From contig NC_068992.1 in assembly GCF_001194135.2 (NCBI RefSeq), positions 6,942,549 to 7,006,548 of the forward strand: DNA of 64,000 bases, written 5' to 3'. This stretch comes from Octopus bimaculoides (Eukaryota). Of the stretch, positions 32,756 through 34,126 are shown piece by piece (the stretch's first letter is position 1; each line of letters opens with the position of its first letter). Made by a program: the position numbers and the translations under genes. The notes below the pieces were generated by a model. The model saw nothing but the letters and a program-made list of their open reading frames with translations. It made no database searches and was not told where the DNA came from.

Positions 32756-33330
32756 TTGCATCTACATGTGAACATGTACCAATATTTATACATGTATCCA
32801 TATTCGAAAATTTATATATATATATTAGATCTAGTAAGCTTCTGGCAGAGTGAGCAACTACATAAAAGCTCCCTTTCTTCCTGCTATCAAAATATAGATT
32901 TTCAAGAGATATCTCTTTTGTGTATCCTCAGTGAATTTAATGGGGTTAGTGAAGTTTAATGTCTGGGGAAGGTTAATGTCTTTCAACACCAAGCCCCTTC
33001 ACATGGATGTTCCTATCAGTGTTGATCAAGTTTCGGTTTTCATCCCAACAGTACCAAGCTACAGATGGTCTGGCCCATCTAAAGCTACCTTGTAGCTTTC
33101 TTTATGATGGAAGTGATGTTCAACAAATTATAAGTTACTAACAATTGTATGATTGCATGGTAAAAAATGTAAAAGTTAAATAATTTTCTATAATTTATTG
33201 AGCTTATATAATGTGATCATCACATAGATTTTTGTTTTATTCTTACTTATGTTTATTCATTTCAACAATAAAATTAAATGAATAATTCAATTCATATTCA
33301 CAATAATTTCATTATAATTTCATTTTTATT

Positions 33331-33360
33331 TACTAATTTGTTTTTCTTTTGCAGGTAAGT
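33331..33360 (+). promoter_or_regulatory. candidate recursive splice site: 3' splice site fused to a consensus 5' splice site (CAG|GTAAGT at 33354/33355)
   Basis: TACTAAT (33331-33337, branch A 33336), pyrimidine tract ttgtttttcttttg, CAG, GTAAGT; no AG dinucleotide between 33228 and 33352. Confidence 0.75.
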
Positions 33361-33416
33361 ACCAGCATTCTTGTGTTTGGTAAATGAATCAATTTTACTA
33401 TTATGAACAAACAAAG
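33355..33416 (+). other. candidate 62-nt cryptic RS-exon
   Basis: bounded by the acceptor above and AAG|GTAAGA at 33416/33417 (second donor AAG|GTATGA at 33424/33425); stops in all three entering frames. Confidence 0.6.
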
Positions 33417-34126
33417 GTAAGAAGGTATGAATTTAAAATTCTATTGCAAAATTCTGAAAAAATATTCTTATATTAAATAATTAATGCAACAATTTCTCAA
33501 AATTTTATTATTGGTAATTTTTAAACTATAAAAGTAACACAAAATTGATTATTGGATAATTTAAGAAGAACTTGATAAATATATATAAATGGTAAATATA
33601 TATATATAAGCAAAGATATTTCAGAAATGCTGCCCATTGGATACAAGATTAAGACTTAATGTCTTGTAACAAATAATATTACACCTATGTTAATCTATTT
33701 AGATATGTACACAGTTATTTTTTTTATTTGGATTATTTTTGAAACTAACATTATTTAATTTTAAATGGAAATGTAATTGCTCACACATAGGTTAACTAGA
33801 TTTATATGTCCTAAAGCAAATTCAGCCACATCACATAGTCAAATGAAGTGAAGTCTGAAATATTGAATAATATTTTACTTATGGCTGATTTAACACCATT
33901 CTAGTTGTAGTTAATTCTAGTCATGACAATTAGAATTTAATTGCAAATTTAGATGTGTTTTAGCACTATTTACTGTTGTTAGATACACAGGAAAGCCAAT
34001 AACATTTTAAGCCAATCAACATCATTCTTGAAGGGATTCTGTTATCAGTGAAATGAATAATCATATTATTGTGGAATGCAAATTTTGACAACACCAAACC
34101 TAATGTATCTCTCTTTCTCTGTTGCT

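What the first reader, a model, noticed from the sequence alone, without database searches (positions are those of the whole stretch)
33228..33430. Textbook recursive splice site (AG|GTAAGT ratchet point) in what looks like a giant cephalopod intron
Seen: ~125 nt with no AG (33228-33352), TACTAAT with the branch A 18 nt upstream, a U-rich tract, then CAG immediately followed by the perfect donor GTAAGT. It lies in a stretch with no recognisable repeat, and it is the only full-consensus YAG|GTAAGT with a pyrimidine tract I found on either strand by eye. Established: this zero-length-exon arrangement defines ratchet points in long Drosophila introns and RS sites in long vertebrate neuronal genes. 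Inference: the window is part of a very long + strand intron removed in steps. I am not aware of recursive splicing being described in cephalopods or other molluscs.
Basis: partly seen in the sequence, partly recalled or inferred. Interest (0 to 1): 0.85.

Follow-up and report, generated by a model that had tools for sequence, protein, structure and literature searches.

The report
Candidate recursive splice site, unverified
The window holds a complete, statistically unusual sequence signature of a recursive splice site (acceptor fused to a perfect donor, followed by a short cryptic exon), but no tool here could show that the site lies in a + strand intron or is ever used, so it remains a good candidate only.

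Summary
TACTAAT lies at 33331-33337 (branch A 33336). A 13/14-pyrimidine tract follows, then CAG|GTAAGT at 33352-33360. No AG occurs in 33228-33352.

The bare 9-mer YAGGTAAGT is at chance level: 2 seen, about 1 expected per window. Joined to an acceptor context this strong, it is expected only 0.004-0.02 times per window.

TT sits at -5/-6. A second strong donor, AAG|GTAAGA, lies 62 nt downstream and bounds a stop-filled 62-nt cryptic "RS-exon". That is the arrangement fly and mammalian recursive sites need. With this donor the chance expectation is about 3e-4 per window; with the consensus branch site it is about 1e-6 to 1e-5.

Gene context is unresolved. I detected no coding exon on either strand. 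CpG depletion is strong and uniform (o/e 0.19), which fits a methylated gene body if the genome is octopus. Strand-asymmetry tests are inconclusive. No RNA data or other cephalopod genomes were reachable.

Verdict: a plausible recursive splice site (about 0.45) of a known kind in an unreported phylum. It is not proven.

The parts
33228..33352 (+). AG-exclusion zone upstream of the acceptor (125 nt, T 67 / A 39 / C 14 / G 5)
   Evidence: no AG; previous AG at 33226-27
33331..33337 (+). Branch-site consensus TACTAAT; predicted branch A at 33336 (position -19; 18 nt before the G of the AG)
   Evidence: TACTAAY occurs only 15 times on both strands of the window. Use as a branch point is inferred.
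33337..33350 (+). Polypyrimidine tract tttgtttttctttt (13/14 Y), with TT at -5/-6
   Evidence: The intronic acceptor context ranks 39th of 7134 AGs. TT at -5/-6 is found in 99.5% of fly ratchet points (Duff et al.).
33352..33354 (+). Acceptor CAG; predicted first-step 3' splice site (junction after 33354)
33355..33361 (+). GTAAGTA: donor that would be regenerated once an upstream exon is joined at 33355. Seven intronic positions match the U1-complementary consensus.
   Evidence: top 2 of 6643 GT sites by an approximate PWM
33355..33416 (+). Predicted cryptic RS-exon, 62 nt (not a multiple of 3), with stop codons in all three frames, 29% GC
33417..33422 (+). Downstream donor AAG|GTAAGA that would define the cryptic exon; weaker than the regenerated donor (10.3 vs 13.0 bits)
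   Evidence: top 0.4% of GT sites. Only 1 of the 39 acceptors with as strong an intronic context (the site itself) has such a donor within 25-120 nt.
33425..33430 (+). Second, weaker downstream donor AAG|GTATGA (alternative 70-nt cryptic exon)
   Evidence: 7.5 bits

Best explanation
The site is a recursive splice site (ratchet point) with its cryptic RS-exon, inside a long intron of a + strand gene.

Proposed mechanism (all steps inferred; only the sequence elements are shown):
1. As the intron is transcribed, U2 pairs at TACTAAT (33336). U2AF binds the T-tract and CAG. U1 binds the downstream donor at 33417. Together these define a 62-nt cryptic exon.
2. The upstream exon is ligated to 33355, removing the first part of the intron as a lariat.
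3. The ligation recreates a consensus donor, exon|GTAAGTA.
4. That donor outcompetes the weaker GTAAGA donor and is used in the next step.
5. The 62 nt and the rest of the intron are removed. Nothing from this locus appears in mRNA.
6. If the regenerated donor failed, a frame-shifting, stop-filled exon would be included.
For: - All motif elements are present at canonical spacing.
- Within the window the acceptor ranks in the top 0.24-0.5% of AGs and the donor in the top 0.03% of GTs.
- TT at -5/-6 matches 196/197 fly ratchet points.
- A short cryptic exon with a weaker donor and no reading frame is what fly and mammalian recursive splicing requires (Joseph et al., PMC8605326). Here it is 62 nt, with donors of 10.3 vs 13.0 bits and stops in all frames.
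- Chance expectation per 64-kb window, both strands:
  - 0.004-0.02 for core plus tract.
  - About 2-4e-4 with the downstream donor added (P = 0.019).
  - About 1e-6 to 1e-5 with TACTAAY added.
  - This means fewer than about 20 such sites, and fewer than 1 with the branch site, expected by chance in a 2.3-2.8 Gb genome.
- The site is not a copy of an in-window repeat.
- Uniform CpG depletion (o/e 0.15-0.26 in all eight 8-kb blocks) with TpG/CpA excess fits a germline-methylated gene body if this is octopus.
- T>A on the + strand is the usual sense-strand sign.
Against: - There is no evidence of transcription, strand, junction reads, lariats or conservation. None could be obtained.
- No exon of a host gene was found on either strand. 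The locus could therefore be intergenic or antisense.
- G>C on the + strand is opposite to the invertebrate sense-strand rule.
- Acceptor-plus-donor pseudo-exons of similar strength are common here: 20 pairs in the window.
- Only 6% of large fly introns are recursive, and recursive sites are rare in mouse. The base rate in cephalopods is unknown.
- The splice-site matrices were written from memory, thresholds were set at the observed values, and the features were chosen after seeing the site. The probabilities are therefore optimistic.
- The branch A at -19 is closer than the -36..-21 range of fly recursive lariats.
- No second recursive-type site exists elsewhere in the 64 kb.
Confidence: 0.45

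Rival explanations
1. Chance or unused motif. An AT- and T-rich, G-poor stretch happens to end in CAGGTAAGT in DNA that is intergenic, antisense to a gene, or intronic but ignored by the spliceosome. It has no function.
For: - The 9-mer is at chance frequency: 2 observed, about 1 expected.
- The upstream 125 nt has only 5 G, so the AG-free zone and T-tract partly come with local composition.
- There are 27 AG-free runs of 125 nt or more in the window.
- There are 20 pseudo-exon pairs of comparable strength in the window.
- No host gene was detected.
- A core-plus-tract rate of 0.01-0.02 per window would give several hundred such sites in a 2.3-2.8 Gb genome.
- Many windows and many kinds of pattern are presumably screened in the first stage (my assumption).
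Against: - The full composite (tract, TT at -5/-6, consensus branch site 18 nt upstream, perfect donor, strong second donor at +62) is expected about 1e-6 to 3e-4 times per window.
- Each feature is an a priori known property of recursive sites.
Confidence: 0.33
2. Ordinary non-coding, UTR, lncRNA or 'poison' cassette exon of 62 (or 70) nt on the + strand that merely happens to start with GTAAGT. It is included in some transcripts rather than always removed.
For: - A strong acceptor and a strong donor lie 62 nt apart.
- Expressed RS-exons exist in flies (<50) and are reported to be potentially numerous in mammals (>6,400).
- Stops in all frames fit a UTR or NMD exon.
Against: - GTAAGT at the first six exon positions is expected in only about 3-6e-4 of AG sites.
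- Once spliced, such an exon regenerates a consensus donor stronger than its own. By the donor-competition model it should mostly be skipped. This rival is therefore mechanistically a variant of the main explanation.
Confidence: 0.17
3. Part of an unrecognised transposable element or other repeat whose consensus carries this motif, for example an antisense A-rich tail giving the T-tract.
For: The window is repeat-rich: at least 13 SINE-like fragments and mariner remnants.
Against: No second copy of 32700-34100 exists in 64 kb, although other families recur many times. Genome-wide copy number could not be tested.
Confidence: 0.05

Closest known systems
Drosophila intronic ratchet points with cryptic RS-exons (Hatton 1998; Burnette 2005; Duff 2015; Joseph 2018/2021; Pai 2018)
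   Same: - Juxtaposed (Y)n-NCAG|GTAAGT, a prominent T-tract and TT at -5/-6.
- A short downstream cryptic exon (about 50 nt in flies, 62 nt here) bounded by a weaker donor.
- Exon content is non-coding and out of frame.
- The site is not in a repeat.
   Different: - Fly sites are defined by junction reads, saw-tooth coverage, lariats and deep conservation inside introns of 11-133 kb. None of these is shown here.
- The predicted branch A at -19 is closer than the fly range of -36..-21.
- The phylum differs (presumed mollusc).
Vertebrate recursive splice sites and RS-exons in long neuronal genes (Sibley 2015; Blazquez 2018; Moon & Zhao 2022, PMC8797253)
   Same: - AG|GT site followed by an RS-exon with premature stops.
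- The outcome is decided by competition between the regenerated and the downstream donor.
- Associated with very long genes.
   Different: - Only about 9-20 fully suppressed intronic sites are firmly established in mammals, so a motif alone is a poor predictor there.
- The host gene and its tissue are unknown here.
Intronic pseudo-exons / cryptic exons
   Same: A good acceptor and donor within a plausible exon length, with no reading frame; 20 such pairs occur in this window.
   Different: Pseudo-exons do not begin with a perfect donor. That one feature (about 3-6e-4 per AG) sets this site apart.

Membership tests
Recursive splice site (ratchet point) | [quoted passage not shown] | tested here: met
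   CAG|GTAAGTA at 33352-33361; donor ranks top 2 of 6643 GT sites
Recursive splice site (ratchet point) | Prominent polypyrimidine tract with TT at -5/-6 (99.5% of fly sites) | tested here: met
   13/14 pyrimidines at -18..-5; T at 33349 and 33350; criterion
Recursive splice site (ratchet point) | Branch point with A, tens of nt upstream, and no intervening AG | tested here: met
   TACTAAT with A at -19, and a 125-nt AG-free zone. This is sequence only; use as a branch point is not testable. It lies slightly closer than the fly range of -36..-21.
Recursive splice site (ratchet point) | Short cryptic RS-exon bounded by a downstream donor that is weaker than the regenerated donor; content non-coding or out of frame | tested here: met
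   62 nt (33355-33416); AAG|GTAAGA 10.3 bits vs 13.0 bits; stops in all three frames; criterion
Recursive splice site (ratchet point) | Lies on the sense strand inside a long (>10 kb) intron of an expressed gene | tested here: inconclusive
   No coding exon was found on either strand by homology or Pfam. CpG o/e of 0.19 suggests a methylated gene body if this is octopus. Strand skews conflict.
Recursive splice site (ratchet point) | Upstream-exon-to-site junction reads, saw-tooth nascent-RNA coverage, and lariats to and from the site | not testable with these tools
   No RNA-seq access
Recursive splice site (ratchet point) | Motif conserved across species while flanks and the cryptic exon diverge | not testable with these tools
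   The exact 28-mer was absent from the metagenome and prokaryote genome collections. Look-ups of five window ORFs found no record. No cephalopod genomes were reachable.
Ordinary protein-coding cassette exon | Open reading frame through the exon | tested here: not met
   Stops in all three frames; length is not a multiple of 3
Interspersed repeat / transposable element | Multiple similar copies | tested here: not met
   No second copy within the 64 kb. The genome-wide test was not possible.

The most novel reading that the evidence does not exclude
Fly-type zero-nucleotide recursive splicing, with a cryptic RS-exon and donor competition, operates in the long introns of a cephalopod. If so, this way of removing giant introns would occur in all three bilaterian superclades, and would be either ancestral or repeatedly evolved wherever neural genes grew long.
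Probability: 0.4. Interest if true: 0.6.

Novelty: new member of a known kind. Interest (0 to 1): 0.42.

Why it matters
Recursive splicing is documented in insects and vertebrates, and its abundance and purpose differ sharply between them. Cephalopods independently evolved large brains, large genomes and long neuronal genes (PMC7222433). A validated site would add a third lineage.

It would also give a concrete locus for asking two questions: whether long-intron processing by ratchet points is ancestral, and whether it scales with intron size.

As it stands, the finding is a well-formed, cheaply testable prediction rather than a discovery. One RT-PCR, one nascent-RNA track or one multi-species alignment would settle it.

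Tried and rejected
1. Host gene. I concatenated stop-free segments of 45 aa or more, after removing microsatellite-coded and in-window-repeated ones.
   - The 79 (+ strand) and 77 (- strand) most protein-like segments were then searched. The + strand gave no hit. The - strand gave only a transposon polyprotein of a pseudoscorpion.
   - Pfam gave only DDE_3 on the - strand.
   - The 127 lower-ranked segments were inspected by eye only.
   - Exons giving stop-free stretches shorter than 45 aa, and non-coding exons, would be missed.
2. Orthologous or other-assembly DNA.
   - Exact-product look-ups of five window ORFs found nothing on record.
   - The 28-mer across the junction was absent from metagenome and prokaryote genome contigs.
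3. tRNA and Rfam scans found nothing.
4. Transcription strand from composition.
   - Skews conflict between the vertebrate and invertebrate rules.
   - The AATAAA deficit on + (85 vs 126) is not significant against other A5T1 hexamers (Fisher p = 0.11), and ATTAAA goes the other way.
   - SINE orientation of 9 + vs 4 - is uninformative.
5. A second ratchet point in the window. The only other high-scoring AG|GT on + (26883) sits in a CT-rich low-complexity tract and has a weak donor, GTAAAA. I rejected it.
6. Two tool calls failed on argument format. One literature search was badly posed and returned no paper that mentions recursive splicing.

Full report
**What is there.**
The + strand reads ...tttatTTACTAATttgtttttcttttgCAG|GTAAGTAccagc.... 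A script confirms the layout:
- The last AG before the acceptor is at 33226-27, so 33228-33352 (125 nt; T 67, A 39, C 14, G 5) is AG-free.
- TACTAAT is at 33331-33337, with the predicted branch A at 33336, 18 nt before the acceptor G.
- Positions -18..-5 are 13/14 pyrimidines, with T at -5 and -6.
- CAG is at 33352-54, and GTAAGT plus A at +7 is at 33355-61.

- A second strong donor, AAG|GTAAGA (G at 33417), lies 62 nt downstream. A third, AAG|GTATGA, is at 33425.
- The interval 33355-33416 is 62 nt, which is not a multiple of three. It has stop codons in all three frames.
- In flies, intronic ratchet points need exactly such a short cryptic "RS-exon" (about 50 nt). It is bounded by a donor that is generally weaker than the regenerated one, and its content is poorly conserved and out of frame. 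The same model holds in mammals (Joseph et al. 2021, PMC8605326).
- By my approximate matrices the regenerated donor scores 13.0 bits and the downstream donor 10.3.
- Duff et al. report TT at -5/-6 in 196 of 197 fly ratchet points, against 44% of ordinary introns. The site has it.

**Is it more than chance?**
- The core YAGGTAAGT is not. It occurs once on each strand (the other copy is at 62755-62763 on the - strand, without a tract). It is expected 0.9-1.0 times per window.
- The combination is.
  - In 1500 simulations at each of three block sizes, using local first-order Markov models, the core with a tract at least as strong occurred 0.004-0.005 times per window. The core with an AG-free zone, branch motif and downstream donor never occurred.
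  - An empirical estimate from the real sequence is more generous. 39 of 7134 AGs have as good an intronic context. P(GTAAGT | AG) is 2.9e-4 (Markov) to 5.6e-4 (observed). This gives 0.011-0.022 per window.
  - A donor of at least 10.3 bits within +25..+120 has P = 0.019. TACTAAY within the 40 nt upstream (34 possible start positions) has P = 0.004 window-wide, and was seen at 2 of the 39 strong acceptors.
  - The result is roughly 3e-4 per window with the downstream donor and 1e-6 to 1e-5 with the branch consensus.
  - Extrapolated to a 2.3-2.8 Gb genome, this means hundreds of chance core-plus-tract sites, about 10-20 with a strong downstream donor, and fewer than one with everything.
- Caveats:
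  - The matrices are from memory.
  - Thresholds equal the observed values.
  - Features were picked after seeing the site.
  - Real genomes are lumpier than the models.
  - Acceptor-plus-donor pseudo-exons of similar strength are common here (7 on +, 13 on -). The one feature that truly sets this site apart is the perfect donor fused to the acceptor.

**Not a repeat, as far as the window shows.**
- BLAST of 32700-34100 against the window finds only AT-rich low-complexity matches.
- A SINE-like family recurs at least 13 times. Its nearest fragment ends at 32686.

**Gene context.** This decides the interpretation, and I could not resolve it.
- The window is 32% GC. It has five scaffold gaps flanked by (TA)n, many microsatellites, SINE-like repeats and mariner remnants.
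- No tRNA or Rfam family was found.
- I searched the 156 most protein-like of 283 filtered stop-free segments of 45 aa or more. The + strand gave nothing. The - strand gave one transposon polyprotein. Pfam gave only DDE_3, at ORF 41732-42043 on the - strand.
- The window therefore holds no detectable conserved coding exon on either strand. That fits a deep intron or intergenic DNA equally well.
- Look-ups by exact product and by the exact 28-mer found nothing. I obtained no annotation, other assembly or orthologue.

**Indirect evidence on transcription.**
- *CpG content.*
  - CpG o/e is 0.19 over the whole window and 0.15-0.26 in every 8-kb block. GpC is 1.06 and TpG/CpA are 1.31/1.37. This is the signature of methylation-driven decay.
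  - CpG sites of the SINE consensus are TG or CA in most copies.
[quoted passage not shown] Methylation is clustered in the bodies of about 14,000 genes. More than 85% of CpGs are intergenic and mostly unmethylated (PMC9476566).
  - That genome has 80,660,576 CpGs counting both strands, in a 2342.5-Mb assembly. This is about 17 per kb, against 5.3 per kb here.
  - If the window is from an octopus, this argues that all 64 kb lie in a germline-methylated gene body. That would support the "long intron" reading, but for either strand.
  - I could not verify the organism. I do not know the spread of CpG density in octopus intergenic DNA. This step is inference.
- *Strand.*
  - After masking microsatellites, the + strand has T>A by 1.2% (z = 2.4) and G>C by 3.5% (z = 5.0).
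  - T>A is the general sense-strand sign. G>C is the sense-strand sign in vertebrates and C>G in invertebrates (PMC5786239, citing Touchon 2004). The two skews therefore disagree for an invertebrate.
  - AATAAA is rarer on + (85 vs 126; binomial p = 0.006). Against other A5T1 hexamers the difference is not significant (p = 0.11), and ATTAAA is reversed.
  - I regard the strand as undetermined.

**Mechanism proposed.** All steps are inferred from the fly and mammalian model.
1. The cryptic exon is defined by TACTAAT, the T-tract and CAG upstream, and by GTAAGA at 33417 downstream.
2. The upstream exon is ligated to 33355.
3. The ligation regenerates exon|GTAAGTA.
4. This stronger donor is used in the next step, removing the 62 nt with the rest of the intron.
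5. Failure of that donor would insert a frame-shifting, stop-containing exon.

**Weighing.**
- With core plus tract alone, I would put a true site at well under one in five.
- The downstream donor, TT at -5/-6 and the branch consensus each raise the likelihood ratio substantially.
- The result depends on how common recursive sites are in this lineage. Values elsewhere: >500 in flies, 9-20 firm ones in mammals, and only 6% of large fly introns.
- The result also depends on my null models.
- I settle at about 0.45 for a site that is really used recursively. The rest is about 0.17 for an ordinary or poison non-coding exon (mechanistically a close variant), about 0.33 for an unused chance motif, and about 0.05 for an unrecognised repeat.

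**Comparison and novelty.**
- At the sequence level the site meets every defining feature of a fly-type ratchet point that can be read from DNA. The features that actually define membership were inconclusive or untestable here: sense-strand location in a long intron, junction, saw-tooth and lariat evidence, and conservation.
- A search for papers mentioning both "recursive splicing" and "cephalopod" found one, with no relevant content. A broader search with mollusc, octopus and squid terms surfaced none.
- If validated, this would be a new member of a known kind in a new phylum. That is interesting for the evolution of long-intron processing, but not surprising to a splicing specialist, given the conserved spliceosome and the long neuronal genes of octopus (PMC7222433).

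Noticed in passing
window 1-64000: Very strong, uniform CpG depletion: o/e 0.19 and 5.3 CpG/kb, with 0.15-0.26 in every 8-kb block. TpG/CpA are in excess (1.31/1.37) and GpC is normal (1.06). This is about 3-fold below the O. bimaculoides genome average computed from published counts. It suggests a germline-methylated domain, which in octopus would mean a gene body.
   Followed up: partly
window 12695-12830, 12853-12984, 15459-15554, 17904-18042, 22163-22305(-), 24275-24402, 24874-24932(-), 25326-25401, 28397-28460(-), 32614-32686, 37317-37457, 54883-54916(-), 62431-62469: A SINE-like family of about 140 nt (consensus ...TTTCAGTTTCCGTCTACCAAATCCACTCACAAGGCTTTGGTCGGCC.GAGGCTATAGTAGAAGACACTTGCCCAAGGTGC...GCAGTGGGACTGAACC...AACCATGTGGTTGGGAAGCAAGCTT). 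There are 13 full or partial copies at 71-96% identity to the consensus, 9 on + and 4 on -, often next to (CA)n or (TA)n. ARAGORN calls none a tRNA. From recollection only, it resembles an abundant octopus repeat.
   Followed up: partly
window 41732-43200 (- strand): Degenerate Tc1/mariner transposase remnant. ORF 41732-42043 matches Pfam DDE_3 (E = 0.0025, below the curated cut-off). Neighbouring frames carry further transposase-like stretches. The best database hit is a transposon polyprotein of a pseudoscorpion (35% identity).
   Followed up: partly
window 58456-59226: Inverted repeat with 148-nt arms (58456-58603 and 59079-59226, 82% complementary, 475 nt apart). It encloses a peptide-like stretch on the - strand (58621-58866) that looks, by eye only, like a mariner N-terminal (HTH) region; it gave no Pfam or database hit. 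This may be an internally deleted mariner-type element with long terminal inverted repeats.
   Followed up: partly
window 13693-14095, 25515-26060, 30207-30841, 36079-36240, 49019-49028: Five runs of N (scaffold gaps of 10-635 nt), most of them bordered by (TA)n microsatellites. This suggests a short-read draft assembly that breaks at TA repeats.
   Followed up: no
window 26601-26890 (+ strand): A 280-nt AG-free, CT-rich low-complexity tract ends in ...ctccctccag|GTAAAATCT. It is the only other AG|GT in the window with a composite score as high as the finding's. Its donor is weak and its 'tract' is a microsatellite-like repeat, so I take it as chance.
   Followed up: partly
window 1-64000, + strand: Persistent G>C skew of 3.5% (z = 5.0) and T>A skew of 1.2% (z = 2.4) after masking microsatellites. 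Cumulative GC skew rises across the whole window. The cause is not determined (transcription, replication or repeat orientation).
   Followed up: partly
window 33137-33143: A perfect yeast-type branch consensus, TACTAAC, lies about 210 nt upstream of the acceptor. Several AGs intervene, so it is unlikely to serve this acceptor.
   Followed up: no
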